From positions 124,001-188,000 of IMG/VR virus record IMGVR_UViG_3300022200_000019: 64,000 nt of DNA. The stretch is one strand, 5' to 3'. A program made the translations under genes and the position numbers. Below, one piece after another: positions 39,829 through 63,449 of this stretch (positions are counted from its first letter, which is position 1; the number at the start of each line of letters is the position of its first letter). The notes under the pieces were generated by a model that made no database searches, was not told the origin of the DNA, and saw nothing but the letters and a program-made list of their open reading frames with translations.

Positions 39829-39836
39829 ATATTTTT

Positions 39837-40190
39837 ATGTTAAAATTAGTCAAAACGCCAAAGAAAAAGAAGCCAACAGATTGTACATTTGAAAAGCCAG
39901 TTGACAATCAAAAAACAGCAGTTAAAATGTTAATGTGCTGTAACAGTAATAACAGAGAATATGTAATTGGCCCAGATGTAGGTTTAGATTTAAATGTATT
40001 GGTAACAAAAACAAAACCAAATTATTATTTCAATCCGGCTATAGTTGATAATGGTGTGCAATATCAAGATTACTTAGGTAACACAATGCACACAGATACA
40101 ATAACAGAAGCAATGCAAGAAGCATTAACAAGACTTGCAGGAACTAGAAGAACCAGGAAAAAAACGGATGCAAATCAATCCAGAAATTGA
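39837..40190 (+). CDS. Degenerate peptide deformylase-like protein
   Basis: VIGPDVGLDLNVLV...FNPAIV echoes PDF motif I; HExxH absent. Confidence 0.4.
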   Translation: MLKLVKTPKKKKPTDCTFEKPVDNQKTAVKMLMCCNSNNREYVIGPDVGLDLNVLVTKTKPNYYFNPAIVDNGVQYQDYLGNTMHTDTITEAMQEALTRLAGTRRTRKKTDANQSRN

Positions 40191-42453
40191 ACAAATCACA
40201 GATTATGCAATTACTATTGCAAAGAAAAAAGAACATCATTACGTGTTAATCGAACATTTATTGCTTAGTTTAATACGCTTTGAACCATTTAATAACGTAC
40301 TAGTAAAGTATGGTGTTGAAGTTGATTTATTAGATCAAGAACTAGACTACTATCTTGACAGTTTAGTAAATCTTACAAACAAAGACTACGATGGACATCC
40401 AAAACGCACAAATGGTCTAGAGCGTGTGTTTAACCGTGCCGGTACACAAGTATTGTTTACAGGCCGTCGTTATATTACTACTGTTGATTTGTATCTTAGT
40501 ATTACTTCTGAAACCAACAGTCATGCACAATATTTTCTGTTAAAATACGGAGTCGAAAAAGAAGCATTTACTTCGTTCTGGAATGAAAATTACAAACAAG
40601 GCAAAGTTACTCTTAACGACGATCAAATTAAAGAAGTACTTGAGGAGCATTGCACTAACTTAAATGCACTTGCTCGTGAAGGAGATCTAGAACCGCTTAT
40701 TGGTCGTTCTGCAGAATTACAAGATGCAATTGAAATTCTTGCTAAAAAGTTCAAGTCTAATGTATTGATGATCGGCGATCCAGGTGTTGGTAAAACTGCT
40801 ATTGTAGAAGGGCTTGCACAAAAGATCGAAAATAGCGATGTACCAGAATTTCTTAAAGACCATGAAATCTGGAGTTTGGAAGTTGGTTCATTGCTTGCTG
40901 GATCTAAGTATCGCGGCGAGTTTGAAGAAAAATTTAAAGATGTTATTAAAGCACTAGAAGCAACCGATAATGCTATTTTGTTTATTGACGAAGCACACAC
41001 TATGCACGGTGCTGGTGCTGGATCAAATTCAAGTCTGGACATGGCCAACATGCTCAAGCCGGCAATCACCAAAGGAAAACTAAAAGTAATTGCTTCCACT
41101 ACCTGGGAAGAATACTACGAGACTTTTGAAAAAGATCGTGCCATGATGCGTCGATTCTATAATCTTTCAATCGATGAACCAGATCACGATACTACAATTA
41201 AGATTCTTCAAGGACTCAGCGAACGATTAGAAGAATATCACGATGTTGAAATTGATTCTGCTGCTATTACTACCGCAGTTGACTTAGGAACACGCTATAT
41301 TCACGATCGTAAGAATCCAGACAAGTCAATTGATTTGCTTGACGCTGCTTGTGCTAAACAACGTGCCAAAGATAACTCAGGTGTAATCATTACTGCCGAT
41401 TTAATTTACGCAGAAGCAAATAAATTAACCGGAATTCCTCAAGAACGCTTAAAAAATGAGGATTGTGATAAGGTTCGTAACCTTGAATCACGTGTTAAGG
41501 AACGATTATACGGACAAGACGAAGTCGTTGATACCGTACTGAAGCGTATTAACGTTTCATTTGCTGGACTTAATTCTGATAATAAACCTGTTGCTAGTTT
41601 CTTGTTCTTGGGCCCAACTGGCACAGGTAAAACTGAACTTGCTAAACTGCTAAGTGAAAACTTGGATATGGAATTGTTACGTTATGATATGAGTGAGTAT
41701 CAAGAAAAACACACAGTATCAACACTTATTGGCGCACCACCGGGTTATGTTGGGTATGAAGATTCTAACTTAGGCGGCGGTAAGTTAATTAACGATTTGT
41801 CTAAAGATCCTTTTAGTATTATTTTGTTTGACGAAATTGAAAAAGCGCATCCAGATGTAAGCAATGTGTTGTTATCAATGCTCGACGAAGGTAAAATTAC
41901 ATCAAGTTCGGGCAAAACCGTAAACTGCACTAATGCTATTATTATTCTTACATCTAACTTAGGTGCTCGTGATAATGAAAACAATAATATCGGTTTTGGC
42001 ACTGATCTAGAGCGCACTGGTTCTGAAGATAAAGCACTCAAAGAATACTTTAAACCAGAACTACGTAATCGCTTAGATGCTATTGTTAAATTTAACAAAC
42101 TAGATACACTAAGTATTAAGAAGATTGTTAATAAATTCTTAAATCAACTCAAAAAGAATTTGTCTAAGAAAGGTATCGCAATTAATGTCACCGAGCCAGT
42201 TGTTGAATATCTAGCAGAAGTTGGATATGACAAGAAGATGGGCGCACGTCCGCTGGCACGTAAAATTGACGAACTATTAAAAGTTCCGCTAAGTGAAAAA
42301 ATTCTGTTTGAAAATTTGCGTGATACTGACATTAACATTCGTTTAACCACAGAAAATACCATAGAATTTGTAAATAAAAATAGCGGCGGTCAAGAAGCTT
42401 CTGTGAACAAAGATGGACTCATTGTACTGGACCAATTCAAACCTAAAGCATAA
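40168..42453 (+). CDS. ClpA/ClpB-family AAA+ unfoldase
   Basis: Clp N-domain, GDPGVGKT, FIDE, GPTGTGKT, LFDEIEKAHP, IGF loop, MGARPL; ATG 40168. Confidence 0.95.
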   Translation: MQINPEIEQITDYAITIAKKKEHHYVLIEHLLLSLIRFEPFNNVLVKYGVEVDLLDQELDYYLDSLVNLTNKDYDGHPKRTNGLERVFNRAGTQVLFTGRRYITTVDLYLSITSETNSHAQYFLLKYGVEKEAFTSFWNENYKQGKVTLNDDQIKEVLEEHCTNLNALAREGDLEPLIGRSAELQDAIEILAKKFKSNVLMIGDPGVGKTAIVEGLAQKIENSDVPEFLKDHEIWSLEVGSLLAGSKYRGEFEEKFKDVIKALEATDNAILFIDEAHTMHGAGAGSNSSLDMANMLKPAITKGKLKVIASTTWEEYYETFEKDRAMMRRFYNLSIDEPDHDTTIKILQGLSERLEEYHDVEIDSAAITTAVDLGTRYIHDRKNPDKSIDLLDAACAKQRAKDNSGVIITADLIYAEANKLTGIPQERLKNEDCDKVRNLESRVKERLYGQDEVVDTVLKRINVSFAGLNSDNKPVASFLFLGPTGTGKTELAKLLSENLDMELLRYDMSEYQEKHTVSTLIGAPPGYVGYEDSNLGGGKLINDLSKDPFSIILFDEIEKAHPDVSNVLLSMLDEGKITSSSGKTVNCTNAIIILTSNLGARDNENNNIGFGTDLERTGSEDKALKEYFKPELRNRLDAIVKFNKLDTLSIKKIVNKFLNQLKKNLSKKGIAINVTEPVVEYLAEVGYDKKMGARPLARKIDELLKVPLSEKILFENLRDTDINIRLTTENTIEFVNKNSGGQEASVNKDGLIVLDQFKPKA

Positions 42454-43721: not shown

Positions 43722-43748
43722 TACTGTGTTTTAAATAAATACAGTATC

Positions 43749-44732
43749 ATGAATTTAAAAGAACTAGATAGTTTTAAACTAGGCGATGCAGTTAACTTCC
43801 ACGAAGAACTAAATCCTGCTCTCTGGGAAAACGAAATGATGCGCTCAGACGTGCGCAAAGCACTGTTACGCATTGCCGCAGATTTCCAAGAGTTCTTAGG
43901 TGTTAAAGATCTAGCAGTAGAAGATGTTCGCGTTTCCGGGAGTAACGCAGCATATTCATATACGCCACATTCAGACATTGACTTACACTTGATTGTTGAC
44001 TTTGACCAAATCAACAACGATGAAGTGTATCAAGAGTTATTCAACGCAAAAAAGTTTCAATATAACCAAGAGCATAATATTAAAGTTCGTGGTTATGATG
44101 TAGAACTGTATGTTCAGGACGCAACCCAACCACACGCCAGTTTAGGTGAATATAGTGTAGCACGTGATGAGTGGACTCGCATTCCAACAAAGCAGCGTGC
44201 CAACCTAGACGATTTTGCAACACGTCAAAAATACGATAAACTCAAAGGCTTAGTTATGGCTGCGTTGGTTAGTAAAAAACTAAACATGGTAGATGACGTA
44301 ACAGATGTTGTTAAACGTTATCGTCGTGCTGGACTAGCAGAGGGTGGTGAGTTTAGCCCAGAAAATTTAGCATTCAAAATGTTACGTACTCAAGGTTATA
44401 TTGAAAGACTTTGGAAACATCGTAGTGAACTAGAAGATCGTGAACTTAGTTTAGAGCAAGCCGAATCTATTGTAGAAGCAGCAATACGCGAATTAGAATT
44501 ACATCAGGTATTAGCAGAAATGAAATTATCAGACTTTTTACCCAAAAAAACCCGAGAGCAAAATCAAGCAGATGAGCGTATGGCTATCGACGCAATGATG
44601 GTTTTAAGTACTTCAACTGAATACGCAATTGAAGATATTGTAAGGGCTGTAGAAGCGGCTTTAGAAACCGGAAAAGTTCACAATCGAAAAGATCTTTTAC
44701 AAATGGCGGCAGATATATTAGAAAAACAATGA
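43749..44732 (+). CDS. Pol-beta-superfamily nucleotidyltransferase
   Basis: SGSNAAYSYTPHSDIDLH, YDVELY. Confidence 0.8.
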   Translation: MNLKELDSFKLGDAVNFHEELNPALWENEMMRSDVRKALLRIAADFQEFLGVKDLAVEDVRVSGSNAAYSYTPHSDIDLHLIVDFDQINNDEVYQELFNAKKFQYNQEHNIKVRGYDVELYVQDATQPHASLGEYSVARDEWTRIPTKQRANLDDFATRQKYDKLKGLVMAALVSKKLNMVDDVTDVVKRYRRAGLAEGGEFSPENLAFKMLRTQGYIERLWKHRSELEDRELSLEQAESIVEAAIRELELHQVLAEMKLSDFLPKKTREQNQADERMAIDAMMVLSTSTEYAIEDIVRAVEAALETGKVHNRKDLLQMAADILEKQ

Positions 44733-46093
44733 AAGACTTTCACGTACTAGCATTAAGTAACGATAATGGAGTAAGAACCTACGCTATTCTAGCAGGCGAA
44801 AAACCCATTGGCCGTGCTGTGCGCAAGGGCAAAGAAATTGCGTTTCAAGTAACCGGATATCCTCCGCAACGAGAACACGGTAGTAACGTAGAACGTATTA
44901 TCGCCAAATGGTTAGATAGTCATTATGTTGACTTACAAGAAGGTGATGTAATATTACATCCTCGTTTTAAAGCACAGCAACAAGAAAAAGAAAGACTTGA
45001 TCAACTGATTGCTGACTATCAAAAACAAGCTGCTGCCGAAGAAGCTGATTTAAAAAGATTAGCAACTTTTTGGTGGAATAACGACGAAAGTCCAGAGGTT
45101 GAACAACTACTGGCACGCATGGGTTGGGAAATCGGCCAAGATGAAGGATATGATGACGAGCCCGGAGCATTTGTAGTACAGATAGGCGACGAAGATGGTG
45201 ACAGCTTTCTTTCTTGGTCGCCGGATGATTTAAGAAACAATGTAACAGAAGGCGACGTTGTTAAACACAAATTTGGACTAAAGCAACAACAAAAGAATAA
45301 AACCAAATATCGTTTTTATCAAGAAATCAAAGACGATATTCCTGTATTTGATCGCGGCAGATATGCGGCTGTAAAGCCACGATACATTGCGTCGCACAGA
45401 CATCCGGAAAACCTAGAACCATTTGATCACTTTGAAGTAGAACCAAGTAATTCGGGAGCCAATGGCAGAATAATTGGCATTACCCGAGACGGGATGCGAG
45501 TATTAGCCGATGTGTCGAGACTAGCACATGCAGAAGCATTCGCTGATGCGTGGAACAGAGGTGGATTTTCTGATAAAGATCCTAGTCGAGAACCGCTGGA
45601 TACATTAGAAAGTCGCCGTTCAAGTGCAGCACTAAAAGGGATTAATCTAGCAGAGAATCCAACAAACGAAGCTGGGTACGAAAGTTCTTGGCAAAAGCGT
45701 TATAGAACAGATCCGGAATTCCGCGAGCGTCAAAAACAAAACGAACGCAATCGCAGAAAGAATCCAGAATACGCAGAGAAGAAACGCGAATACCAACGCG
45801 AGCGTTCACGTAAGTTATATGCTGATCCAGACTGGCGCAAAGAAGACCTAGCAAGACGCAGAGATGTGTATGCTGCTAACAAAGACGCAGTATTAGCCAA
45901 ACGTCGTGAGTTAATGAAAGATCCAGCATATGCTGCTCGTAAAGCAGAATATTGGAAACAAGACGCTGCTAAACGTAAAGAATTAACACAAAAGTTCCAA
46001 CAGTTATTACAGGATCCAGATTTTAACCCTGCTAAACTACCAACAGCAGAACTTAAAAAGTTTATTAAATTTTTAGAAAAAGGAAGAGTATAA
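44729..46093 (+). CDS. Modular hypothetical protein (candidate head polyprotein)
   Basis: Repeated (L/V)xE-GDV junctions; charged helical C-terminus. Confidence 0.75.
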   Translation: MKDFHVLALSNDNGVRTYAILAGEKPIGRAVRKGKEIAFQVTGYPPQREHGSNVERIIAKWLDSHYVDLQEGDVILHPRFKAQQQEKERLDQLIADYQKQAAAEEADLKRLATFWWNNDESPEVEQLLARMGWEIGQDEGYDDEPGAFVVQIGDEDGDSFLSWSPDDLRNNVTEGDVVKHKFGLKQQQKNKTKYRFYQEIKDDIPVFDRGRYAAVKPRYIASHRHPENLEPFDHFEVEPSNSGANGRIIGITRDGMRVLADVSRLAHAEAFADAWNRGGFSDKDPSREPLDTLESRRSSAALKGINLAENPTNEAGYESSWQKRYRTDPEFRERQKQNERNRRKNPEYAEKKREYQRERSRKLYADPDWRKEDLARRRDVYAANKDAVLAKRRELMKDPAYAARKAEYWKQDAAKRKELTQKFQQLLQDPDFNPAKLPTAELKKFIKFLEKGRV

Positions 46094-46770
46094 TGTCATC
46101 ATTGAACGAAGATCCAATTAGAGATCTACTAAACAAGTTATTTGGTAAAAAGTCCGACGCACCTACTGCGGATACCGGATCGGAAGATAATATGGACAAT
46201 GCTGCTAATACCGGTGACATTACTCCAGGTCAAAGTTATAGTAGCGCAGCATCATTTGCTGACAAATATGATCGTAGCCCGATTAAAACATATGACTTAC
46301 CTCCTTCAGATGTAAAAGCAGCGAATCCTCCGGGAACAGAGAACGAGCCTTTTGACATTGACGCTATGAATAAAGCAGATTCTTTAAGAAATCTATTTAA
46401 AAGAGATGAGCCAAGAAAGCCTGTTACTGTTAAGAACGTTGAACCTAAGAAACCAGGCGAATATACTGGTGTTACAAAAGCAGTCGACGATGCTGCAACA
46501 TGGGTTGGAGATAAAGTAGATCAAGGTTGGGGTGCTGTTAAAGATTTCTTCAATGAACCAAGCACACCAGAACCAGCAGCAGATGATGAATCCGGTTGGT
46601 TAGACGGTGTTGTTGATCGCTATAAAAGATTCTATGGCGTCGGCGACAAGGAAGCAGAAACTCCTAAACCTGCGTCTAAGCCAGCAGATAGCGATGCTGC
46701 TAGATCAGCCAACGACGCACTAAACAGACTAATGGCAGATCCAGAATTTAGAAAGATGTTGGATCAATAA
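46093..46770 (+). CDS. Low-complexity candidate internal head protein
   Basis: MSSLNE-DP leader; D/K/P/A-rich. Confidence 0.7.
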   Translation: MSSLNEDPIRDLLNKLFGKKSDAPTADTGSEDNMDNAANTGDITPGQSYSSAASFADKYDRSPIKTYDLPPSDVKAANPPGTENEPFDIDAMNKADSLRNLFKRDEPRKPVTVKNVEPKKPGEYTGVTKAVDDAATWVGDKVDQGWGAVKDFFNEPSTPEPAADDESGWLDGVVDRYKRFYGVGDKEAETPKPASKPADSDAARSANDALNRLMADPEFRKMLDQ

Positions 46771-48662
46771 TGAACCTTTACGATCTATTTGAAGCCTTAG
46801 TTGGTCATGACATGCCTCGCAGCAAGAAATATAGCAGCGATCAGTCTGACTTTGAAATACAGCCGCAACTAGGTGAATTAATAGATCGTATCGAAGCAGG
46901 CGAAATCAAACCTAAAATTGTAAAACTAAACCCACAGAAATTACAAGCAACGCAAGGATGGCTAGATACTCGCAATGGTGGCGGTGCGCCATTGCTAGAT
47001 CGCTATACAAAATTACCTGTTATTCTTAAAGATCAATCAGGATATCATATCTTAGACGGGCACCATAGAACATCCCACGCTCTTAGTAAAGGACAACAAT
47101 CGATTAAAGTTTATCTATTTCGCATGCCCGACGATTTAAGCGAAGCATCGTTTGCTGATTTAAAGAAACTGGTTCCTGTGTATAATGTTGATGAATGGTC
47201 ACAAGAATTAGGTATTCCACGTAAGGTAGCATACTTATACGGCGAACTTGGTTACTTACAACGCGGCAAACCAGAACAGATTATGGTTAAAGTTCAACAT
47301 TTTATGGGCGGTGGCGGAGTTGTTCCGTTTTGCTTAGAACACGTAGGTGACTTGTCAGATCGTATGACACCTAGACATCCATTACATTGGAGTTATGGTG
47401 CTGTAAAAGAAAAAGCAGAAAAAACATACAGATCGTTAACACACAGTTATGGATTTGAGCGCGAGTTCCAAGAGAACCTAGACGCTACAATCGAATATCA
47501 AAAGATTGAAAATCCAGATGAGTATCGTGAGCGTGTATATCGTGCTATGCAAATGTATGCCGATGCACATAAAGAATTGCTTCCATACTGCCACACAGAT
47601 ATTCACAAGAATGCTGTATATGCTGCTATCTCATTGGGTGAAAGAAAGTTTGATGATGCTGCTACCTTTGTAGGTGCAATCAAACGTCTTTGTGCTAGCG
47701 AAGAAAGTTATCACAATGCGCTAAGAGCATATGATAAAAAACTAGATGGCAAACTAGCAGGCGAAGAAGTACTAGACGAAGCGGGCGAATGGTGGAAAAC
47801 ATTTTCAGATGTAGTTTCTGGATCAAAAAAAGCATATGATACCGCAGTTATTGCTGGTCCCAAATGGCAAGCAGCAATTGATAGCAAAGATCCAGTTGTA
47901 ATTGATCAAGGTATTAAAGACTTAGCAAAAGACTTAGGTATGGATCCAAACGATCCAAAATACAAGCAATGGGCAGGCAGTATGCGTTACAAAGCATACA
48001 AAGCAGCGGATATTAAACACGATGTAACACGAGATGCTGAACGTAAAGCCTATGCTGCTGATCCACGACACTGGAAGGAACTTGAAATTCCCGGTTATGA
48101 TGAACCCTGGGTTACATTTAGTAAGCCATCCCCACGTGGTATTCCGCTTCGTGTAGGCGGTGACAAAGTAGATGAAGAGGCTCTTGACCGTTTTGAGATA
48201 GGCATGGGATTAGAGCAGATGCATAACAATGACATTGCTCTTGTTGGTGGCATGCGTTCAGGATCAAGCCCTGCTAACTTAACACGTTTAAAATATAGCA
48301 TTTATGATGTTCCTATGCTAAAACAACTAAAGCAAACAGGTGGCAATCAAAATGACGCACTCATGGGCCATGTTGAATTAATGGTAGAAGATGGCACAGG
48401 CGATCTTATTGGTTTAATTAACATCGAAATGAAGCGCGGCGGCAAACGCCAAGGTTACGGCTCACAAGTTGTGCGTTCTATTATTGATAGTCCGTTTGCT
48501 CGCAAGCCATTTAGAATCTACGATATACAAAAGAAAGCTGTGGGTTTTTGGAAGAAGATGGGTGTAGAGTTTACACACTCAGACTTTAAAACTCCTATTG
48601 CGCCGACTCAGCTGCCCAGGCTTGCATTGGGACCAGGGAATATATTTGGAATCATACGATGA
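46770..48662 (+). CDS. ParB/Srx-like + GNAT acetyltransferase modular protein with CTS-like leader
   Basis: MNLYDLFE; LQATQ...PVILK...ILDGHHR; KRQGYGSQVV...AVGFWKKMG. Confidence 0.75.
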   Translation: MNLYDLFEALVGHDMPRSKKYSSDQSDFEIQPQLGELIDRIEAGEIKPKIVKLNPQKLQATQGWLDTRNGGGAPLLDRYTKLPVILKDQSGYHILDGHHRTSHALSKGQQSIKVYLFRMPDDLSEASFADLKKLVPVYNVDEWSQELGIPRKVAYLYGELGYLQRGKPEQIMVKVQHFMGGGGVVPFCLEHVGDLSDRMTPRHPLHWSYGAVKEKAEKTYRSLTHSYGFEREFQENLDATIEYQKIENPDEYRERVYRAMQMYADAHKELLPYCHTDIHKNAVYAAISLGERKFDDAATFVGAIKRLCASEESYHNALRAYDKKLDGKLAGEEVLDEAGEWWKTFSDVVSGSKKAYDTAVIAGPKWQAAIDSKDPVVIDQGIKDLAKDLGMDPNDPKYKQWAGSMRYKAYKAADIKHDVTRDAERKAYAADPRHWKELEIPGYDEPWVTFSKPSPRGIPLRVGGDKVDEEALDRFEIGMGLEQMHNNDIALVGGMRSGSSPANLTRLKYSIYDVPMLKQLKQTGGNQNDALMGHVELMVEDGTGDLIGLINIEMKRGGKRQGYGSQVVRSIIDSPFARKPFRIYDIQKKAVGFWKKMGVEFTHSDFKTPIAPTQLPRLALGPGNIFGIIR

Positions 48663-49120
48663 GAGCAAACGAATTTATCAGCGAAATTAACCTAGATCCA
48701 CGCTCGTGGTTTGGTGCTGGACAAATGGGTGGCCGTGGAGGCAGTGGCTCTCAAGCAGTTGCTACTGGCGGACGCACAGCACCAGCAACCGCCAAACCAA
48801 ATCTAGGTAAATTTGAACGTACACCAGATGGAAAGATCATTGATCCACAAGGACAGGTAGTTAATCCACGCACAGGCGATCCGTATACAAAAGCAGACGT
48901 AACCAGAGACACTGGTAAGAGTCCAGAGTTTAAGAGTATATCTCCAGAGCGTTCACACTATGCTAGAACTACACAAGCAGACCGTGTTAGAGACGAACGT
49001 GCTGCACGCAACATGGAACGTTATGCCGATGAATACCAAGCAGCAAAAACTAGATGGCAAGAAAAAGGTGATGCTGCTTCATTTGGCGATATGATAAAGA
49101 TTCTAAACAGAGTAGATTAA
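48659..49120 (+). CDS. CTS-leader hypothetical protein
   Basis: MRANEFISE; Gly-rich. Confidence 0.75.
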   Translation: MRANEFISEINLDPRSWFGAGQMGGRGGSGSQAVATGGRTAPATAKPNLGKFERTPDGKIIDPQGQVVNPRTGDPYTKADVTRDTGKSPEFKSISPERSHYARTTQADRVRDERAARNMERYADEYQAAKTRWQEKGDAASFGDMIKILNRVD

Positions 49121-49353
49121 TGCGTGAATTGAGATATAACACGGAAACATTAGGTTTTTCGTCACCAGACGATAGTTGTTATCTAGATCCCAGCGATCCT
49201 ATACACGAATTTCGTCGCACAGGCAATGCTGCTGCATTAAATCAACCACGACGTATTCCAGTTGCACAACAGTTTGCAGAACATGAACGTAAAATGGAAT
49301 TAGCAAAAGCACAGGGTATTCGTCCTGGTTCCCCAGCATGGTATATGTTATGA
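49120..49353 (+). CDS. Hypothetical protein
   Basis: DDSCYLDPSDPIHE...GIRPGSPAW. Confidence 0.7.
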   Translation: MRELRYNTETLGFSSPDDSCYLDPSDPIHEFRRTGNAAALNQPRRIPVAQQFAEHERKMELAKAQGIRPGSPAWYML

Positions 49354-50174
49354 AAGTATCAGAAATTATTTGCGAAGGCACTGGTATCGACCAGCACATC
49401 GCGCCGGAATTATTGCAACAACAAGTAAATCAAATCATTGATGCTATTAAAGCAGGCGGTTATTTGTTAACGGATGCTGATAAAGCCTTGCTCGATTATG
49501 CACGTAAACAAAAAATCTATCATCCAGATGAAATTGCGAATAACAAATTCCATAAATCAATAATCGCATCTGTTAAGCCGTTGCTAAAAAAAATAGAACA
49601 GCTATGGTCTGAACCACGCGATATAACCAGTGATGTTGAAGCAATTATTGGTGAGCCTATTCTTACCCTTCATCAAAAAATAAAACCATTGCTTGCAAAT
49701 CCTAATAGACAACCAATGGATTATGTTGTGCGAGCAAACTTAACACAATTATTAATTGCTGCTGCATGCCCAAAAAACAATGGCACTTGGGATACCAGCA
49801 CAGCCAAATGCTATTCAAACAATTATCCTTGGATATTAGATCAGGTGAAGGAAAAGTATCGTGCTAAAGACAGAAAACGCCGTGCCAACATGACTCCAGA
49901 TGAAAGAGAAGAGGTTCAGGCTAAAGACAGAGAATATCAGCAACAAAGACGGGATACCATGACTCCAGCTGAAAGAGAAGAGTATTTGGCTTACGACAGA
50001 GAACGGAAACGTAACCGTCTTGCCAACATGTCTCCAGCTGAAAGAGAAGAGTATCGGGCTAAACATAGAGAATATTACCAACAGTGGACGGCTAACATGT
50101 CTCCAGCTAAAAGAGAAGAGTATTTGGCTAAAAAAAGAGAACGGCAACAACGGCGGAAGGCCAAGAAAAAATGA
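49350..50174 (+). CDS. CTS-leader protein with 23-aa charged repeats
   Basis: MKVSEIICE; ATG 49350. Confidence 0.75.
   Translation: MKVSEIICEGTGIDQHIAPELLQQQVNQIIDAIKAGGYLLTDADKALLDYARKQKIYHPDEIANNKFHKSIIASVKPLLKKIEQLWSEPRDITSDVEAIIGEPILTLHQKIKPLLANPNRQPMDYVVRANLTQLLIAAACPKNNGTWDTSTAKCYSNNYPWILDQVKEKYRAKDRKRRANMTPDEREEVQAKDREYQQQRRDTMTPAEREEYLAYDRERKRNRLANMSPAEREEYRAKHREYYQQWTANMSPAKREEYLAKKRERQQRRKAKKK
49890..50165 (+). repeat. 4 x 69-bp coding tandem repeat
   Basis: ATG(A/T)CTCCAG(A/C)T(G/A)AAAGAGAAGAG... = M(T/S)P(A/D)(E/K)REE...RE. Confidence 0.9.
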
Positions 50175-50374
50175 AAGTATCAGAAATCATCAACGAAGGT
50201 GTAGGACGTATTACGCCGCAAAACCAAACACAGGATGTCGGTCCTGATCAAGTTTCTATTGAAGCAAAGAAATTAGGTTTTAAAGTAGATCGGGATGGTC
50301 GCCCACCACTTTTAAGTTCAAACGCAAAGAAAAACACAAATCCTAACACACTATTCAATCTTGGCATAAATTAA
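50171..50374 (+). CDS. Small CTS-leader protein
   Basis: MKVSEIINE-GVGRIT... Confidence 0.75.
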   Translation: MKVSEIINEGVGRITPQNQTQDVGPDQVSIEAKKLGFKVDRDGRPPLLSSNAKKNTNPNTLFNLGIN

Positions 50375-50377
50375 TAC

Positions 50378-51088
50378 ATGTCAGATGTGATATATTGCTC
50401 CGGAGATTCGTGGACCTACGGCGCCGGTCTTAATAATCTTAACGATTCGTTTTGTTATCAATTGTCTACATTAATAAATGTCGACTGCGTTAATCTAGGC
50501 GTTAATGGCGGTAGTAACAGCGGAATGTTTAACGAAGTATTTAATCGACTCGACAAAATAAACAATAGTAAATACGATCGTGGTTATATTATACTAACAT
50601 TTACCGAAAATGGAAGAGATATACGAGATTTTAAAAATCGCCCATTTGATTACATATCCGCATATAAAGATATGGTTCATAATTATAACTTTTACACCTG
50701 TGTATTGGATGATATTGAATATGAGTGGGAAGTCAAGCTATCTCAACTCAGAGAAAAAATAGATCCAAGGTTTCGTATCATAACAGGATGTAATTTTGCC
50801 AAGCCAAAAAATATAAAACTAGATATTCAAGAGCCATGGATTTCATTATTAGGTTATAATAAGTTAGTGCCAAGACTTACCTGCGTTGAAACAACTAATA
50901 CATTAAATGAAATATTAGGTATTGAATCTTCCGACGACCATAAACTGTGGTTAATTGACCATGGGCAACAACCAATTGATATATATAACTTTTTTGATCA
51001 GTGCTCGTATATGTTAGATCATGATCGAGGGCATCCTAATAAGGTCGGACATCAAATCTGGGCAGAGAGGATACTATGCGAGCTCTAA
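50378..51088 (+). CDS. SGNH/GDSL-like hydrolase
   Basis: SGDSWTYG, NLGVNGGSN, RGHPNKVGH. Confidence 0.8.
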   Translation: MSDVIYCSGDSWTYGAGLNNLNDSFCYQLSTLINVDCVNLGVNGGSNSGMFNEVFNRLDKINNSKYDRGYIILTFTENGRDIRDFKNRPFDYISAYKDMVHNYNFYTCVLDDIEYEWEVKLSQLREKIDPRFRIITGCNFAKPKNIKLDIQEPWISLLGYNKLVPRLTCVETTNTLNEILGIESSDDHKLWLIDHGQQPIDIYNFFDQCSYMLDHDRGHPNKVGHQIWAERILCEL

Positions 51089-51780
51089 TCGGATATACTG
51101 GATTCATCGGCGGAGTATTGCAAGGACAAATTAGATTTGATTTAACATTTAATTCAGTGAATATTAATGATCTTCCAGAACATAACATTGATATACTATA
51201 TTGTGCTGCACCAACTGGCAGTAGAATGTATGCTAGCGAATATCCAGCACAGGACCTAGAAAACACTAACAAATTAATAGAAACATTAGAAAAATCTAAC
51301 ATTAAAAAATTTATTTTAATTGGCACAGTAGATTCAATACATGCATTAAACACGTCATATGGTCGTAACAGAAAAATGTTAGAAGATTTTGTTAAATTTA
51401 AATTTAAAGATTATCATATTGTTAGACTATGTTCATTAATACATTCAGACATTAAAAAAAATGTACTCTATGATTTAAAACATAAAAAATATCTAAATAA
51501 AATTAATAAAGAACAAGTTAACCAATGGTATCCATTGGATCGGTTACATAGCGACATACAAAAAAATATTTCAATGAATATCAGAGAATCAAATTTTGTC
51601 AGTGAACCCATATCAAATTTAGAAATTATTAACAATTTATACCCGGGTCTCGATGTTGGTTATTGTAAAAATACAGAACCATATAATTTAAAGTGTTGCG
51701 ATACTGTAGACTATCTAATAAGTAAAACAGAAATATTTAAAGAAATGGAAAAATATATTGGGCATGCTATTACAAAATAA
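51076..51780 (+). CDS. NAD-dependent epimerase/dehydratase-like protein
   Basis: LIGYTGFIGG, YGRNRK. Confidence 0.8.
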   Translation: MRALIGYTGFIGGVLQGQIRFDLTFNSVNINDLPEHNIDILYCAAPTGSRMYASEYPAQDLENTNKLIETLEKSNIKKFILIGTVDSIHALNTSYGRNRKMLEDFVKFKFKDYHIVRLCSLIHSDIKKNVLYDLKHKKYLNKINKEQVNQWYPLDRLHSDIQKNISMNIRESNFVSEPISNLEIINNLYPGLDVGYCKNTEPYNLKCCDTVDYLISKTEIFKEMEKYIGHAITK

Positions 51781-52852
51781 AGGTGGGATGTTCGAACCGT
51801 TACGGTGGAGTGGGAGCATTCGGGACTTTCCTTATTTTAACGAGTATCCGTGGCTTGAACGTTATAAAACTAAAAACTATTATGTTGGTGCAAGTGCCGC
51901 TTGGGATTTTTTTCAAGATCTACCCATTGGGTTTGACGCATATATCTTTATCCATCATGTAGAGTTATGCGATCCTAAATGGCTCAAACAACAACAAAAA
52001 AGAGTCAATACGCCGTTTTATGTTCTGTTGTCGGGAAATGACTATAACATTAATATTCCAAATACTACTTTTATTCCATATACACATTGGCACTATGATT
52101 TACAAAAAATAGTTGACTGGTGGGGTATACAAAAAACACCCGACCATAAAAAATATAAATTTAGTGCAGTTAATAATAGAATTACACAAGCAAAAGTTTG
52201 GATTACCACTAAGTTATTAATTTCTAGTAGAAATGAATCATTAATAATTAATAATCCAAATTGGATTGAAAGTAAGAATATACATAACTGGGAGCATTGT
52301 GGAAATCCTATTCTAGACGAGTTGACCGATATTTTTTTACAAGAGTTCATCGACTTAGAACTCAAAGACGAGTTTGATAAGGATAAAAATTTTCAAAGGT
52401 ATAATTCTAATCCATGGCAGCCATTATATACAGACACCTCTATACATTTTACAAACGGTAGCCATCATTATAGTTTTATGATGGATGACTATTTTCCATA
52501 CACGTTTCCCGGACCGCATATTGATGAAAAAACATTTAAATGCTTAGTAGCAGGTACTGCATTTATACCAGTTGCGCAATTTGAAATTTATAAATCGTTG
52601 GAAAATTTTGGATTACAGTTTGATTATGGTTTTAACACTGAATGGGATAACGACCCTGGTAACTTGTCAAGATTTGAAAACATTATAAAATTAATTGATT
52701 TGCTAAATGATTACTCAAAAGAAGAACTGTACAGCAAAACAAAAGACATCTCAATTTATAATCAACAATACATATTTGATGGCAAATTCTATAAAAATTG
52801 CGAATTACACAATGAAGAATGCATTGAACAGTTGCATCAACTAATAGCATAA
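51758..52852 (+). CDS. Hypothetical, possibly glycosyltransferase-like protein
   Basis: IDEKTFKCLVAGTAFIP resembles GT10/exostosin-type C-terminal motif; AT-rich. Confidence 0.55.
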   Translation: MGMLLQNKGGMFEPLRWSGSIRDFPYFNEYPWLERYKTKNYYVGASAAWDFFQDLPIGFDAYIFIHHVELCDPKWLKQQQKRVNTPFYVLLSGNDYNINIPNTTFIPYTHWHYDLQKIVDWWGIQKTPDHKKYKFSAVNNRITQAKVWITTKLLISSRNESLIINNPNWIESKNIHNWEHCGNPILDELTDIFLQEFIDLELKDEFDKDKNFQRYNSNPWQPLYTDTSIHFTNGSHHYSFMMDDYFPYTFPGPHIDEKTFKCLVAGTAFIPVAQFEIYKSLENFGLQFDYGFNTEWDNDPGNLSRFENIIKLIDLLNDYSKEELYSKTKDISIYNQQYIFDGKFYKNCELHNEECIEQLHQLIA

Positions 52853-52862
52853 ATACGTCTAT

Positions 52863-55091
52863 ATGAACTTAAATGACATCCTCAACGAAAAAATTAAGAA
52901 AGTACATGGTAAGTGGGCCCTGGTAAGCAAAAGCGATCCGGATAAAGTCTTACAATATTATCATGGCAAAGACCATCCTAGCAAAGAATGGGAAAAGAAA
53001 GTTGAGCGTCGTGTTCATGCATTCTCAGAAGCAGAAAGTTTAGACAAAACCATTGATAGAATGCGTAACTTAGATATCGATGATATCGAACACCTGAAGC
53101 GTTATTCAAACCCACAATTAAAAGATTGGTTAAAACGCTTAACAGCAGCAAATAAAAACAATATTGGTTCAGCACTTAATACATTAGACACTATGGGTCC
53201 TATTGCTAAACCATTTGCTAAGTCATTTGTACAAAAGCAATTTCCAGGCATCGACGATACAGAGTTTGACCAAGCCTGGAAGTTCTGGCAAGAAACTGAT
53301 CCAGCAACTCGTTCAGCAGTTACTAAAGGTGACTTGACTACGCTTGATCCAAGAGACGAACATGGCTTTGTTAAAGAAGCCAATAATGACATAGTAGCGA
53401 ACAGTATCAATGAATACAATACCGACGGCATTGATCCAGGAAACGATGAACTATTTGTGCCTATGGGTCTGCTCAACCGTTTTGAAGATAATGGGTGGTA
53501 TGCATTTGACGGCGGTCGAGATCAAGCGGTGTTAGCCAAACGCAACATACCTTATGTGCTGAAAATTGTAGGTCAAGGATCGCACAACAGAATTGACGCA
53601 GTTCGCCAGTATGTTGATTTCTTTCGTCGCAATCAACATAATCCACATTTTCCCAAAGTGGGTAGTGATAAAACACTAACCTGGGAAGGCAAAAAATACT
53701 ATGCTTACGCTCAAGAAAAACTTATAGATTTACCGGGTGATGCGGTGATGGATTATCTCGAAGATACTATGCAATCATTTGGTCACAGCGGAAAACAGCC
53801 TAACTTTGACAAAATACCCCAGGGGCTGTCAGCAAAGCAAGTTAAAGGTTTAATGAATGCTATTAGTGAGTTGCTTGCATCGGGCATAGGCAATAATCGT
53901 GCGTTTGATTTGGGTAATGTCCTGAATATTATGAAACGAAAAAATGGACAGCTAGTGATTGTTGATCCATTTAGTTCTCACGATCGTTTAGATCCTAGCG
54001 AAGAATACGTGAGCGAAACAGATGATTATGATGCTTGGTTAGAAAAAGCCAAAAAACGTGCAGAAAAGCAAGCAGCAAAAAAACGTGCTGAATTACAGCA
54101 AGTAATGAAGGGCATCGAAACCGATCCAGAAAAACTAGCATTACAAGGTACAATTCAAGCGGCACGCGGTGAGCTTAGTAAGCGTAAGCGTGAAGCATTG
54201 GCTAAGATGGAGCAAATGAAACAAATTTACTCTGAGTTTTCTGATGAAGAATTAGATAAAATTATCGGGCGTTATTCAAAAGGTCCAGGTGCTGGTTCAG
54301 ATTTTGTGGAATGGTTAAAGTCCATTAAACAAGAACGCGAAGACGAGCGGTCTGGTGTTCAACAACGACAGGATGTATTTAGAAGCGTGGCAGGACCCAT
54401 GCAAGGCAAACAAAGCCAAAAGGCTGCACCTGCACAAGGTAAACCATGGACACAGTTAGGTATGACTCGTGATGAATTTAGAAAAATTCTAAACAACCCA
54501 CAACATCCTCGTCATAGAGAAATTAAACAATTACACGATCAGTATAAACAAGTCGACGAAGATTTAACTCGCAGAGATTTCTTAAAAGGTGTCGCAGGCG
54601 GGGCAATGGCGCTAGGGGCTATGAAAGCTGCTAAAGCATTAGGATTAAAAGATCCTACCAGATCCACAGACACTGATGATCAGTACCAGAGATTCACAGG
54701 CGCAAAACCTGCACCATTGTATGCTAAACCAGACCTGGATCCAGAACGTAAATGGAACCGTGTGGGTGTCAATCAACCAGGCGGTCAGTTCAGCATTGTG
54801 CTACACAAAGACTTTGATTTATATTTGTATTTTGTAACACGTGATTTTTCCACATCGCCCTATGCCTACATAGAATTACAGGATGGTGAAAAATATAAAT
54901 TCCGCATTCGTACTCTGAAAAACGATACATTTACCATCGAAGATCCCAGAATGGCAGCAACACTATTGAATTATCAAGGTAAATTCAATCTGTATGTTGG
55001 CGATGACGTGTACACATTTAACATCATGCCCAGTCAGGAATCCAAAGTATTATATCGCTGGTGGAAAGAAGGCACACATCAGGGATTGTGA
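52863..55091 (+). CDS. CTS-leader modular protein: kinase-like domain + internal Tat-signal module
   Basis: MNLNDILNE; GGRDQAV...VLK...FDLGNVLNIM...IVDP; VDE-DL-TRRDFLK. Confidence 0.75.
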   Translation: MNLNDILNEKIKKVHGKWALVSKSDPDKVLQYYHGKDHPSKEWEKKVERRVHAFSEAESLDKTIDRMRNLDIDDIEHLKRYSNPQLKDWLKRLTAANKNNIGSALNTLDTMGPIAKPFAKSFVQKQFPGIDDTEFDQAWKFWQETDPATRSAVTKGDLTTLDPRDEHGFVKEANNDIVANSINEYNTDGIDPGNDELFVPMGLLNRFEDNGWYAFDGGRDQAVLAKRNIPYVLKIVGQGSHNRIDAVRQYVDFFRRNQHNPHFPKVGSDKTLTWEGKKYYAYAQEKLIDLPGDAVMDYLEDTMQSFGHSGKQPNFDKIPQGLSAKQVKGLMNAISELLASGIGNNRAFDLGNVLNIMKRKNGQLVIVDPFSSHDRLDPSEEYVSETDDYDAWLEKAKKRAEKQAAKKRAELQQVMKGIETDPEKLALQGTIQAARGELSKRKREALAKMEQMKQIYSEFSDEELDKIIGRYSKGPGAGSDFVEWLKSIKQEREDERSGVQQRQDVFRSVAGPMQGKQSQKAAPAQGKPWTQLGMTRDEFRKILNNPQHPRHREIKQLHDQYKQVDEDLTRRDFLKGVAGGAMALGAMKAAKALGLKDPTRSTDTDDQYQRFTGAKPAPLYAKPDLDPERKWNRVGVNQPGGQFSIVLHKDFDLYLYFVTRDFSTSPYAYIELQDGEKYKFRIRTLKNDTFTIEDPRMAATLLNYQGKFNLYVGDDVYTFNIMPSQESKVLYRWWKEGTHQGL

Positions 55092-55411
55092 CCGTATAGG
55101 TCTTGTGTGGACAACATCTCCCATTTGTCCCATTCAGGACGCCAGTGATATTTGTATTCTCTGACTTTGCGAACCACCGTGGTAGACACATAATCACGGC
55201 AACCGCCAAACGGATCGCAATGTCTGGCTGATTTATCCTCTATGTGATATTGTTCCACAGGAGATTCATAATCTTTGGCACGATACTGATCCTGGCTGGT
55301 CGCCCATTCCCAGATTGCAGTGCTTGCCAGACTGATGCCCAGCGAATCCAGAAATGCTGGAGCCGCTGGACTATACAGACTAATTGTGGCGATCAGAATC
55401 AGCTGGCGCAT
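55079..55411 (-). CDS. Secreted hypothetical protein
   Basis: Signal-peptide-like N-terminus. Confidence 0.65.
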   Translation of the reverse strand: MRQLILIATISLYSPAAPAFLDSLGISLASTAIWEWATSQDQYRAKDYESPVEQYHIEDKSARHCDPFGGCRDYVSTTVVRKVREYKYHWRPEWDKWEMLSTQDLYGHNP

Positions 55412-55980
55412 TAACGACGTTCTAGATCTTCAAATGCACGTGCAGCCGCAGATTCATCTGTGACTGTGATGGATTCAGCCACAGCAACTTTTTCGGAAAT
55501 GCCAAGAGACAGGTTAATGTATGCACGATACATGGTTCCTTCCTTGAACACAGCCTTGTTGACTACACGATAACCGTTCACAGGAACATCTTTAAATTCG
55601 CTGACAGACACAAACTCGTTGGTCTGTGTAGAGTCGCTGGTTACGCTCTTGCGATTATCTGCGGTATACTGCTTAAATTTACCTGAAGTAAGAGCAGATA
55701 CTTTGTCGCCCAGTTTGATCTTAGCACTATGCAATGCTTTCTCCATTGCAAATTCCATGTCATCTGCGAGACCAGTTGCAGCAGCATAGATAATGCTACC
55801 ATCTTCAACACCTGGATCCAGATACCATACAGGTACAATTTCCTTCTTTTCAAGTGGCACAACACCAACAACGTCAACACCGCCGACCTTGTCTTCTGCT
55901 TCCATTCGTGCTACACTGCTGTTAGACGCACAACCGCCCACAAAGGCAGCAGCCATAGCAATTACGATTACCTTTTTCAT
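55411..55980 (-). CDS. Lipoprotein (LPP20-like)
   Basis: MKKVIVIAMAAAFVGG-C lipobox; PVWY...IYAAATG...A..KAL..AK..L. Confidence 0.75.
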   Translation of the reverse strand: MKKVIVIAMAAAFVGGCASNSSVARMEAEDKVGGVDVVGVVPLEKKEIVPVWYLDPGVEDGSIIYAAATGLADDMEFAMEKALHSAKIKLGDKVSALTSGKFKQYTADNRKSVTSDSTQTNEFVSVSEFKDVPVNGYRVVNKAVFKEGTMYRAYINLSLGISEKVAVAESITVTDESAAARAFEDLERR

Positions 55981-56129
55981 TTCTTTGTAACTCCAGTAGA
56001 GTCAATAATTTGAGACTTAACAGAATTATAATCTGCTTCGAGTCCCGCCATTGTGCCCTTGAATGGGTTAATACCTGTAGCACAAACAGCAAGAGCAACG
56101 GCAAGTACTACAATAATCAAAGTTTTCAT
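55977..56129 (-). CDS. 50-aa exported peptide
   Basis: MKTLIIVVLAVALAVCATGINPFKG...; SD AGGA; ATGA overlap with lipoprotein gene; not in track. Confidence 0.6.
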   Translation of the reverse strand: MKTLIIVVLAVALAVCATGINPFKGTMAGLEADYNSVKSQIIDSTGVTKK

Positions 56130-56166
56130 AATTAAAATTCATTCCTATATTGCGAAATGTATCTAT

Positions 56167-56194
56167 ATTATACACAATGCTAATCTAATGTCAA
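56167..56194 (-). promoter_or_regulatory. Sigma70-type promoter of the reverse operon
   Basis: TTGACA-16 bp-(TG)TATAAT on the - strand. Confidence 0.75.
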
Positions 56195-56221
56195 CCATTA
56201 ATTTTGTTGCATAAATACAAC

Positions 56222-56491: not shown

Positions 56492-56509
56492 TACCCGCAT
56501 AAATAGTAG

Positions 56510-59166: not shown

Positions 59167-59168
59167 AT

Positions 59169-63430: not shown

Positions 63431-63449
63431 TTACTAGCATAAATACTGT

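What the first reader, a model, noticed from the sequence alone, without database searches (positions are those of the whole stretch)
44729..55091. Large CTS-region genes look like polyproteins with internal hydrophobic-X-E junctions
Seen: module boundaries coincide with xxE sites. In 46770: LFE, LSE-ASF, LDE-AGE, VDE-EAL bracket the ParB-like domain, two unknown modules and the GNAT domain. In 52863: LNE, FSE, VKE-ANN, VSE-TDD, VDE-DLTRR bracket the kinase-like and Tat modules. In 44729: LQE-GDVILHPRFKAQQQEK and VTE-GDVVKHKFGLKQQQKNK are a repeated junction motif. Inference: unrelated effector modules are strung together under one packaging leader and released by the prohead protease, a plug-in architecture that lets new domains be captured.
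Basis: inference. Interest (0 to 1): 0.7.

Follow-up and report, generated by a model that had tools for sequence, protein, structure and literature searches.

The report
Phage effector chains with cut-site junctions
A giant T4-headed phage strings unrelated enzyme modules into long proteins, and each module is joined by the same short "aliphatic-x-Glu" motif that ends its capsid-targeting-like leader, so the chains look built to be loaded into the head and diced by the head protease, though no cleavage has been shown.

Summary
Their raw number equals chance, but their placement does not. In 11 orthologs of the 46770 protein, LSE125, LDE337 and VDE469 are kept 11/11. Two of them sit in indel-rich linkers, and one ortholog swaps its last module right after the Glu.

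In relatives of the 52863 protein, a small "KWALVS" domain (65/65 copies, 42 internal) and a kinase-fold module (36/36, 24 internal) are always directly preceded by L/I/V-x-E. The same motif ends the N-terminal leader MRAxEF(I/L)xE when the module stands alone. Modules are inserted or deleted exactly at the Glu. The leader matches T4's capsid targeting sequence MKTYQEFIAE.

The contig is a 213-kb piece of a Rak2/PA5oct-like jumbo phage with a T4 gp23-type capsid protein. It breaks just where relatives carry the gp21-type protease. Internal Tat and Sec signal peptides follow junctions directly.

Best reading: head-targeted polyvalent polyproteins cut at L/I/V-x-E by the prohead protease. Packaging and cleavage are inferred, not shown. 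This is a new variant of known kinds.

The parts
43734..43741 (+). AATAAATA, a T4-late-promoter-like motif 7 nt before the ATG of gene 43749, the first gene of the abutting or overlapping run 43749-49120
   Evidence: The related CATAAATA is 16:0 strand-biased and precedes structural-looking genes.
43749..44732 (+). 327-aa nucleotidyltransferase-like protein. It has a leader-like start MNLKELDSF and an in-frame fossil leader LAE|MKLSDFLPKK near its C-terminus.
   Evidence: Pfam NTP_transf_2 is weak (E 0.0076) and phrog_36119 scores 2.6e-43. The internal leader was found. Homologs P0116 and P0124 carry the leader MKIxxIVNE and a downstream KWALVS domain.
44729..46093 (+). 454-aa three-module protein with no canonical leader. 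Module A is residues 1-71, module B 72-174, and module C plus a basic repeat tail 175-454.
44942..45250 (+). 103-aa cassette (module B). It is inserted exactly after LQE71 and ends with VTE174, and it is absent from orthologs P0017, P0018, P0021, P0024 and P0026. Its core (WWxxDE..GWEIGQDEGYD) sits behind MRLxEF leaders in GH19 chitinases, GNATs and other proteins.
   Evidence: alignment A4 and BLAST map. In P0027 the leader MRASDFIKE is followed directly by GDVVKNKFGLKQQQKNK.
46093..46770 (+). 225-aa acidic, low-complexity protein (pI 4.6). Function unknown, no family match.
46770..48662 (+). 630-aa polyprotein candidate. Order: leader MNLYDLFE(8) | ParB-like 9-125 | helical module 126-337 | module 338-469 | GNAT-like 470-630.
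   Evidence: Orthologs A1 and model. ParBc_2 is weak (E 0.0086), but the DGHHR motif is present. GNAT is supported by atlas features at 0.94 and TM 0.55-0.61 over about residues 473-630, and by GNAT chains as the top PDB profile hits.
47136..47144 (+). junction LSE123-125|ASF
   Evidence: Kept as aliphatic-x-E in 11/11 orthologs with six different P2 residues and an indel-rich upstream flank. Model confidence drops from residue 125.
47772..47780 (+). junction LDE335-337|AG
   Evidence: 11/11 conserved. It lies inside the low-confidence stretch 321-360. The homologous module of Salicola phage SCTP-2 gp47 ends here, at that protein's C-terminus.
48168..48176 (+). junction VDE467-469|EAL
   Evidence: 11/11 conserved with an indel-rich flank. 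Ortholog P0010 carries a different GNAT module from exactly this point. The module stands alone behind the leader MRINEVIVQD in L005.
48659..49120 (+). 153-aa basic, Gly-rich protein with the leader MRANEFISE|
49350..50174 (+). 274-aa basic protein with the leader MKVSEIICE| and C-terminal basic repeats. The mechanical ORF starts at 49338.
   Evidence: (STPR-like, weak)
50171..50374 (+). 67-aa protein with the leader MKVSEIINE|
50378..52852 (+). Three genes without leaders (GDSL/SGNH-like, NAD-binding-like, unknown) in a low-GC island.
52848..52855 (+). CATAAATA late-promoter-like motif 7 nt before the ATG of gene 52863
52863..55091 (+). 742-aa polyprotein candidate. Order: leader MNLNDILNE(9) | KWALVS domain 10-56 | helical 57-172 | 12-aa spacer | kinase-fold 185-385 | coiled basic module 386-566 | Tat-signal plus beta domain 567-742.
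53370..53414 (+). double junction VKE172|ANNDIVANSINE184|YNT in front of the kinase-fold module
   Evidence: It lies in the low-confidence stretch 164-192. P0053 joins HGFIKE directly to TDDYD, so the kinase cassette is inserted Glu-to-Glu. All 36 homologous modules are preceded by aliphatic-x-E.
54009..54017 (+). junction VSE383-385|TDD at the end of the kinase cassette
   Evidence: low-confidence stretch 374-387
54552..54638 (+). Junction VDE564-566 followed at once by the Tat-type signal DLTRRDFLKGVAGGAMALGAMKAAKA. There is no in-frame start codon in the 24 codons before the twin arginines.
   Evidence: Pfam TAT_signal scores 19.4 bits against a cut-off of 22.7. The motif is conserved in P0052, P0054 and P0056. 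DNA was read.

Best explanation
The genes at 46770 and 52863, and the leader genes around them, encode head-internal 'polyvalent' effector polyproteins of a jumbo phage with a T4-type head.

Proposed steps:
1. A roughly 9-residue N-terminal leader, M-(R/K/N)-x-x-(D/E)-(F/L/I)-(I/L/F)-x-E, works like T4's capsid targeting sequence and takes the chain into the prohead core.
2. The gp21-family prohead protease cuts after Glu in L/I/V-x-E. This removes the leader and separates the modules at the linkers. The modules are ParB-like, helical, GNAT, mini-kinase, basic coiled modules and a Tat-signal beta domain.
3. The pieces are then ejected with the DNA.

Because every module begins right after such a Glu, any leader-bearing gene can be fused in frame behind another. 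The leader's end becomes an internal cut site, so modules are gained, lost and swapped as cassettes.

Shown here: the anatomy, the junction rule, the cassette indels, the T4-type head lineage and the late-promoter-like motifs.
Inferred: packaging, cleavage, the enzyme responsible and ejection.
For: 1. Junction rule. P1 is Glu in 65/65 copies of the KWALVS domain (42 of them internal), P3 is L/V/I in 64 and M in 1, and P2 has 14 different residues. All 36 kinase-fold homologs, 24 of them internal, are preceded by aliphatic-x-E. Stand-alone P0158 and P0200 start exactly at P1', so the motif is not part of the fold.

2. Leader end equals internal junction.
- MRASDFIKE|GDVVKNKF in P0027 matches VTE|GDVVKHKF here.
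- MRAQEFISE|INAPDEL in P0062 matches INE|YNT..DEL here.
- QLDE|ISRRDLLK in P0056 matches QVDE|DLTRRDFLK here.

3. Cassette indels fall exactly at Glu. These are module B of the 44729 protein, the kinase module relative to P0053 and the C-terminal module swap in P0010.

4. Eleven orthologs keep the three internal sites of the 46770 protein despite indel-rich flanks.

5. The sites fall in low-confidence linkers of the AlphaFold models.

6. Leaders match T4 sequences read from the T4 record: IPII and IPIII MKTYQEFIAE, and Alt MELITELFDE. Codons within the leaders vary, which points to selection on the protein.

7. Lineage.
- The capsid protein matches Pfam Gp23 at 6.6e-99 and is 68% identical to that of Vibrio phage 2.275.O.
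- 2.275.O, PA5oct, SCTP-2 and RAS14 all carry Peptidase_S77, placed two genes upstream of the capsid gene, exactly where this contig is cut.
- The capsid protein N-terminus keeps L-(L/T)-E|G.
- PA5oct gp150 starts MKINDIITE and is annotated as detected in virions by ESI-MS/MS.

8. gp21 cuts after L/I-x-E, and a 10-residue capsid targeting sequence is sufficient for packaging (PMC9026906).

9. Conserved internal Tat and Sec-type signal peptides directly after junctions only make sense if a new N-terminus is created there.

10. CATAAATA or AATAAATA motifs precede both structural-looking genes and these genes.
Against: - No protease gene lies on the 213-kb contig, and there is no proteomic or N-terminal data for this phage.
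- The [LIVFM]xE count is at chance, and other such sites lie inside folded domains. Accessibility would therefore have to decide which sites are cut.
- V is frequent at P3 and F occurs (FSE56), whereas the published gp21 motif is L/I-x-E.
- The 44729 protein has no N-terminal leader.
- The nearest cultured relative, 2.275.O, shows no MRxx(D/E)F starts, and three other jumbo phages of this kind show only chance-level numbers. Leaders starting MK/MN were not scanned for in those genomes.
- The 46770 model is poor (mean pLDDT 52), so its last two borders rest mostly on alignments.
- All junction statistics come from homologous families, so the counts are not independent events.
Confidence: 0.6

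Rival explanations
1. Fusion scars. The aliphatic-x-Glu joints are leftovers of the leaders of once-separate genes, kept as harmless flexible linkers. The proteins then act as uncleaved multidomain polyvalent proteins, whether packaged or not.
For: Fossil leaders are visible in frame: LAE|MKLSDFLPKK in the 43749 protein and ANNDIVANSINE in the 52863 protein. Polyvalent proteins that stay unprocessed are known, for example the N4 virion RNA polymerase (PMC5512222).
Against: Scars should decay. Instead P3 and P1 are kept in 65/65 and 36/36 module copies and in 11/11 orthologs, while P2 and the flanks vary freely. Internal Tat and Sec signals would be useless without a cut.
Confidence: 0.2
2. The leader and junctions are read by something other than the prohead protease. 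Candidates are another phage or host protease, or the phage's own Clp/ClpS system acting on new N-termini. In that case the proteins work in the infected cell rather than in the virion.
For: The contig encodes ClpX, ClpP, ClpS-like and ClpA/B-like proteins next to this locus. Several predicted new N-termini are Tyr. SCTP-2 gp47 carries an HExxH module, and zincin processing is the published proposal for polyvalent proteins.
Against: No peptidase domain was found in the window's leader proteins. The motif equals the gp21 specificity and the T4 capsid targeting sequence. A protein with this kind of leader is annotated as a virion component in PA5oct.
Confidence: 0.1
3. The conserved gene starts serve translation of leaderless late mRNAs, and the internal motifs are coincidence.
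For: CATAAATA lies only 4-7 nt before the ATG of several leader genes, which leaves no room for a Shine-Dalgarno site. [LIVFM]xE is common, and its counts are at chance.
Against: The same leader peptide heads genes in the middle of overlapping runs that have no promoter motif (46770, 48659, 57832, 60482). Codons vary while the residues are kept. Coincidence cannot give 65/65 and 36/36.
Confidence: 0.05

Closest known systems
T4 capsid targeting sequence and internal proteins (IPI-III, Alt), processed by the gp21 prohead protease
   Same: A short N-terminal leader of the pattern M-basic-x-x-x-E-F-(I/L)-x-E ends in the protease motif. The cargo behind a conserved leader is hypervariable. The head module is of T4 type.
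   Different: T4 cargo is mostly one module per leader, and cuts remove terminal propeptides. Here up to six unrelated modules follow one leader, with the cut motif repeated at each joint. The leader is usually one residue shorter, and V is common at P3. The protease itself is not on the contig.
Polyvalent proteins of phages and conjugative elements (Iyer et al. 2017, PMC5512222)
   Same: Unrelated conflict domains (ParB_N, GNAT, nucleotidyltransferase, kinase or zeta-like, amidoligase, NT5C) are strung in one polypeptide with extensive shuffling. Relatives at the same locus reach 1695-2938 aa.
   Different: That work proposes processing by built-in zincin or assemblin-like peptidase domains, and its text has no occurrence of 'capsid targeting'. 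Here no peptidase domain was found in the chains. The joints instead carry a separate protease's motif, identical to the leader end.
Ejection and inner-body proteins of phiKZ-like phages (SPN3US gp245, phiKZ gp175 substrates)
   Same: Many head-internal proteins are cut after Glu by a gp21-related protease, and some propeptides are cut at several sites (PMC10052503).
   Different: The motif there is A/S/G-x-E. Apart from the protease's own self-cleavage, all identified cuts there produce N-terminal propeptides, not strings of separate functional modules.
Twin-arginine (Tat) signal peptides
   Same: The T-R-R-D-F-L-K motif, a weakly hydrophobic Ala/Gly stretch and A-K-A are conserved in four relatives.
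   Different: The signal lies 566 residues inside the precursor, and the Pfam score is below the cut-off (19.4 vs 22.7). It could act only after a cut.

Membership tests
T4-type CTS-targeted internal head proteins | N-terminal leader of about 10 residues ending in (L/I)-x-E, with hydrophobic residues at the targeting positions | tested here: met
   At least 15 genes on the contig start M(R/K/N)xx(D/E)(F/L/I)(I/L/F)xE. MRSLSEFLTE has the exact spacing of T4 MKTYQEFIAE. The 44729 protein lacks such a leader.
T4-type CTS-targeted internal head proteins | gp21-family (Peptidase_S77) prohead protease in the same genome | tested here: inconclusive
   There is no match on the 213-kb fragment. The contig starts at the gp23 gene, and relatives have the order portal, two small genes, protease, scaffold, capsid. 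S77 is present in 2.275.O, PA5oct, SCTP-2 and RAS14.
T4-type CTS-targeted internal head proteins | Protein is present in the mature head and cut after the Glu | not testable with these tools
   The only indirect evidence is PA5oct gp150 (MKINDIITE...), which its GenBank record annotates as found by ESI-MS/MS.
T4-type CTS-targeted internal head proteins | Late expression together with head genes | tested here: inconclusive
   CATAAATA or AATAAATA lies before genes 43749, 52863, 56222 and 56510 and before structural-looking genes, with a 16:0 strand bias. Exact TATAAATA is not enriched. No transcript data were examined.
Polyvalent proteins (Iyer et al. 2017) | Two to 15 unrelated effector-type domains in one phage polypeptide, with shuffled architectures | tested here: met
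   Module maps. Pfam domains in relatives P0113, P0131, P0120, P0098 and P0115. Kinase fold. GNAT.
Polyvalent proteins (Iyer et al. 2017) | Built-in processing peptidase (zincin MPTase or assemblin-like) in the chain | tested here: not met
   No peptidase family was found in the ten proteins of the locus. An HExxH module is seen only in SCTP-2 gp47.
Tat signal peptide | S/T-R-R-x-F-L-K, a moderately hydrophobic stretch and an A-x-A site | tested here: met
   TRRDFLKGVAGGAMALGAMKAAKA. The pattern is kept in P0052, P0054 and P0056. Pfam scores 19.4 bits, under the 22.7 cut-off.
Tat signal peptide | Located at the N-terminus of the exported polypeptide | tested here: not met
   The signal starts at residue 567 of 742, with no in-frame start codon nearby. 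The feature would be met only after the proposed cut at E566.
Protein-kinase-like fold | Bilobal kinase fold with a conserved Lys, a catalytic-loop Asp/Asn and a metal-binding Asp | tested here: inconclusive
   Foldseek PDB hits are all kinases or aminoglycoside phosphotransferases, with E about 3e-4 and TM by target 0.2-0.4. The consensus GEGRDQ..K..DLxxxxNI..GQLVIxDPxS is conserved. Activity is untested.

The most novel reading that the evidence does not exclude
The prohead protease does more than trim leaders. By cutting at the joints it unmasks cryptic Tat and Sec signal peptides. Fragments delivered into the cytoplasm with the DNA would then be re-exported by the host's own translocons into the periplasm. 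One capsid-loaded chain would therefore seed effectors in two compartments of the newly infected cell.
Probability: 0.2. Interest if true: 0.85.

Novelty: new variant of a known kind. Interest (0 to 1): 0.68.

Why it matters
If the joints are cut, this is a simple and general grammar for phage-delivered weaponry: one leader, then any number of modules, each headed by L/I/V-x-E.

- It would link two ideas that have been described separately, T4's capsid targeting sequence and polyvalent proteins.
- It would explain how giant phages capture and shuffle effector domains in frame.
- It would allow internal-protein cargo and mature fragment borders to be predicted from sequence in uncultured T4-headed jumbo phages.
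- It gives a natural template for multi-cargo packaging in T4-type delivery vectors.
- The internal Tat and Sec signals raise a directly testable question: can ejected proteins be re-routed to the periplasm?

Tried and rejected
- Megablast of the region against phage records found no match.
- Back-translated pattern scans of viral contigs with the 52863 protein found nothing.
- PHROGs gave no function for the three proteins.
- Exact TATAAATA is not enriched; the C/A variant is the biased one.
- The MRxx(D/E)F start-pattern scans of PA5oct, 2.275.O, SCTP-2 and RAS14 gave chance-level numbers. That exact leader form is therefore lineage-restricted. Related MK-type leaders do occur there in the few genes read.
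- A first mixed-fragment alignment (A2) was misaligned and discarded. A3 was used instead.
- The all-against-all BLAST breakpoint test showed only modest enrichment (40% vs 22% within 6 residues), because local alignment ends are fuzzy. The family-by-family counts are cleaner.
- The phiKp24 cryo-EM paper gives no cleavage data.
- Chance as the sole explanation was rejected because of the 65/65 and 36/36 counts and the exact cassette borders.

Full report
**What the window is**

The window is bases 124001-188000 of a 212,917-bp linear viral contig that CheckV rates 61% complete. The contig starts with a gene that matches Pfam Gp23, the T4 major capsid protein family, at E 6.6e-99. Its closest cultured relative is Vibrio phage 2.275.O (348.9 kb, 68% identity). 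Next come PA5oct-like and other Rak2-like jumbo phages.

In 2.275.O and PA5oct the genes just upstream of the capsid gene run portal, two small proteins, a gp21-type prohead protease, then scaffold. The protease aligns with T4 gp21 through the conserved His and GVSSRG blocks and passes the Peptidase_S77 cut-off. My contig is cut exactly there, so its lack of a protease match is uninformative. SCTP-2 and RAS14, the only cultured phages with tblastn matches to the 46770 and 52863 proteins, also have Peptidase_S77.

**Checking the observation**

Counting alone gives no signal. The question therefore becomes whether the listed sites are special by position.

**The 46770 protein (630 aa)**

Eleven full-length orthologs with 57-95% identity exist. 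In their alignment:
- E8, LSE125, LDE337 and VDE469 are kept as aliphatic-x-Glu in 11/11 sequences.
- At residues 123 and 467 the upstream flank is full of indels and P2 varies (six residues at 123).
- Ortholog P0010 carries a different GNAT module that begins immediately after the Glu of the last site.
- The N-terminal and second modules occur in two sequence types that recombine independently across the first junction.

The AlphaFold model is weak overall (mean pLDDT 52). It does resolve a ParB-like domain (about 32-122) and a helical domain (about 166-320), with confidence collapsing from residue 125 and over 321-360.

The helical module matches the C-terminal half of SCTP-2 gp47 and ends where that protein ends. 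The last module is GNAT-like by language-model features, by predicted structure over about residues 473-630 and by profile search. It stands alone as a 149-aa gene behind the leader MRINEVIVQD in a related 64.7-kb viral contig.

**The 52863 protein (742 aa)**

An exhaustive HMMER search found 196 relatives, nearly all of which match only one piece.

*Small domain.* Residues 10-56 form a small domain (KVxGKWALVS...) found at N-termini, in the middle or at the end of proteins of 61 to 2938 aa. In 65 distinct copies, 42 of them internal:
- the residue before the domain is Glu in 65/65;
- P3 is L (34), V (15), I (15) or M (1);
- P2 takes 14 different residues.

Two stand-alone versions start exactly at the first domain residue, so the triplet is not part of the fold.

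*Kinase-fold module.* Residues 195-372 are modelled at pLDDT 85-97 and hit only kinases and aminoglycoside phosphotransferases in the PDB. In 36/36 homologs the module is preceded by aliphatic-x-Glu. In 12 of them this is the end of the leader MRAxEF(I/V)xE, and in 24 it lies deep inside a longer chain.

Relative P0053 joins HGFIKE directly to TDDYD, whereas the window has VKE|ANNDIVANSINE|..kinase..YVSE|TDDYD. The kinase cassette is therefore inserted from Glu to Glu.

*Model and sites.* The model places LNE9, FSE56, VKE172, INE184 and VSE385 in low-confidence stretches, and VDE566 just before one. Only ISE336 and FVE483 lie in well-modelled regions.

**The 44729 protein (454 aa)**

The homologs are mosaic. 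Five orthologs lack residues 72-174. The insertion begins right after LQE71 and ends with VTE174, and it starts with a diverged copy of the GDV.H.F..KQQQ start of the next module.

In P0027 the same module follows the leader directly (MRASDFIKE|GDVVKNKF...). In P0034 it is flanked on both sides by RLEKGVAE. The inserted module B occurs right behind MRLxEF leaders in GH19 chitinases, GNATs and other proteins.

This protein has no leader of its own, which weakens "one packaging leader" for it.

**The leader**

At least 15 genes on the contig start M(R/K/N)xx(D/E)(F/L/I)(I/L/F)xE, and so do most metagenomic relatives. Read from the T4 record, IPII and IPIII start MKTYQEFIAE and Alt starts MELITELFDE. 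One gene here, MRSLSEFLTE, has identical spacing. Codons differ between leaders, so the peptide is what is conserved.

The published work on T4 states the following (PMC9026906):
- Ten residues are enough to target a protein into the head.
- Residues 8 and 10 govern processing.
- gp21 cuts after L/I-x-E.
- The capsid targeting sequence may be a way for T4-like phages to load varied proteins.

Three further points fit this picture. PA5oct gp150 starts MKINDIITE, sits in the gp67 position and is annotated as detected in virions. The capsid proteins of this group keep L-(L/T)-E|G near the N-terminus. The scaffold proteins are crowded with such sites.

**Relation to polyvalent proteins**

Relatives that carry the small domain include chains of 1695 and 2938 aa. 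These combine cytidylyltransferase-like, DUF5661, ParB_N, GNAT, amidoligase, DUF6934 and NT5C domains. The 1695-aa chain lies at the same locus, downstream of DnaJ-like and Clp genes, in a related contig.

This is the "polyvalent protein" class of Iyer et al. That work proposes processing by built-in zincin peptidases and does not discuss capsid targeting sequences. In SPN3US, all identified prohead-protease cuts except the protease's own self-cleavage produce N-terminal propeptides. I found no paper that describes leader-equivalent joints.

**Signals after junctions**

VDE566 is followed at once by TRRDFLK, an Ala/Gly stretch and AKA. The pattern is kept in P0052, P0054 and P0056. There is no in-frame start codon in the 24 codons before the twin arginines, and the stretch is too weakly hydrophobic for a membrane anchor. 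P0054 also has a Sec-type signal straight after NLSE. Such signals are hard to explain unless a new N-terminus is made at the Glu.

**Expression**

CATAAATA occurs 16 times on the coding strand and never on the other. It lies 4-37 nt before structural-looking genes and before 52863, 56222 and 56510, and AATAAATA precedes 43749. By analogy with T4's late promoter TATAAATA (my own knowledge), this suggests late expression. No transcript data were examined.

**Verdict**

The plug-in architecture is well supported. Packaging and cutting by the prohead protease is the most economical mechanism (confidence 0.6) but remains inferred. The main alternative is that the joints are uncut fusion scars.

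Noticed in passing
window 52848-52855, 56210-56217, 56498-56505, 63438-63445; 43734-43741 (AATAAATA): CATAAATA is 16:0 strand-biased over the whole contig and lies just upstream of genes. Where it lies only 4-7 nt before the ATG there is no room for a Shine-Dalgarno site, so some late mRNAs may be leaderless.
   Followed up: partly
window 50378-52852: A low-GC island (0.34-0.36) holds three genes without leaders: GDSL/SGNH-like hydrolase, NAD-binding-like and unknown. It is wedged between leader genes and looks like a separately acquired sugar- or lipid-modifying cassette.
   Followed up: no
window 56510-61885: Four tandem paralogs of about 440 aa start at 56510, 57832, 59169 (GTG start) and 60482. 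All begin MRAxxFIxE|Y(K/N)RDxT, which would leave an N-terminal Tyr after a cut. They give only weak matches to phrog_28193 and phrog_17056.
   Followed up: partly
window 55079-56194, minus strand: A perfect sigma-70 promoter (TTGACA-16-TATAAT, 56194-56167) faces two minus-strand genes that encode a lipoprotein-like protein and a signal-peptide protein. This is an oppositely oriented unit that is probably read by the host polymerase.
   Followed up: no
L003 7-2157 and protein P0012: Another phage lineage strings ART-like, ParB-like, GNAT and the same MRSG/GNAT-like module with a different repeated linker, (K/T)(A/V)DDGVLGQ. This suggests lineage-specific joint motifs for the same kind of effector chain.
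   Followed up: partly
L001 3257-4558 (Salicola phage SCTP-2 gp47): The order is leader MKVKQITE, an HEMVH zincin-like motif, an acidic linker with VDE and INE, then the helical module of the 46770 protein. The neighbouring paralogs gp45, gp46 and gp48 share the start MKVKHITQYLFESYK.
   Followed up: no
window 44520-44732 (inside gene 43749): The last 70 residues of the nucleotidyltransferase-like protein begin with an in-frame Met and a leader (LAE|MKLSDFLPKK). This appears to be a once-separate small leader gene now fused to it.
   Followed up: partly
window 39070-42453 and contig 97760-118426: The phage encodes DnaJ-like and ClpA/B-like proteins (the latter matches phrog_4871 at 3.6e-234). 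By N-terminal sequence it also encodes ClpX-, ClpS- and ClpP-like proteins, which amounts to an unusually complete Clp set beside the effector locus.
   Followed up: no
window 45650-46090 and 49850-50170: The C-terminal tails of the 44729 and 49350 proteins are basic helical repeats (DPE(F/Y)..RE(Y)..R.R, with a weak STPR-like Pfam hit). They are plausible DNA-binding tails for head-internal proteins.
   Followed up: no
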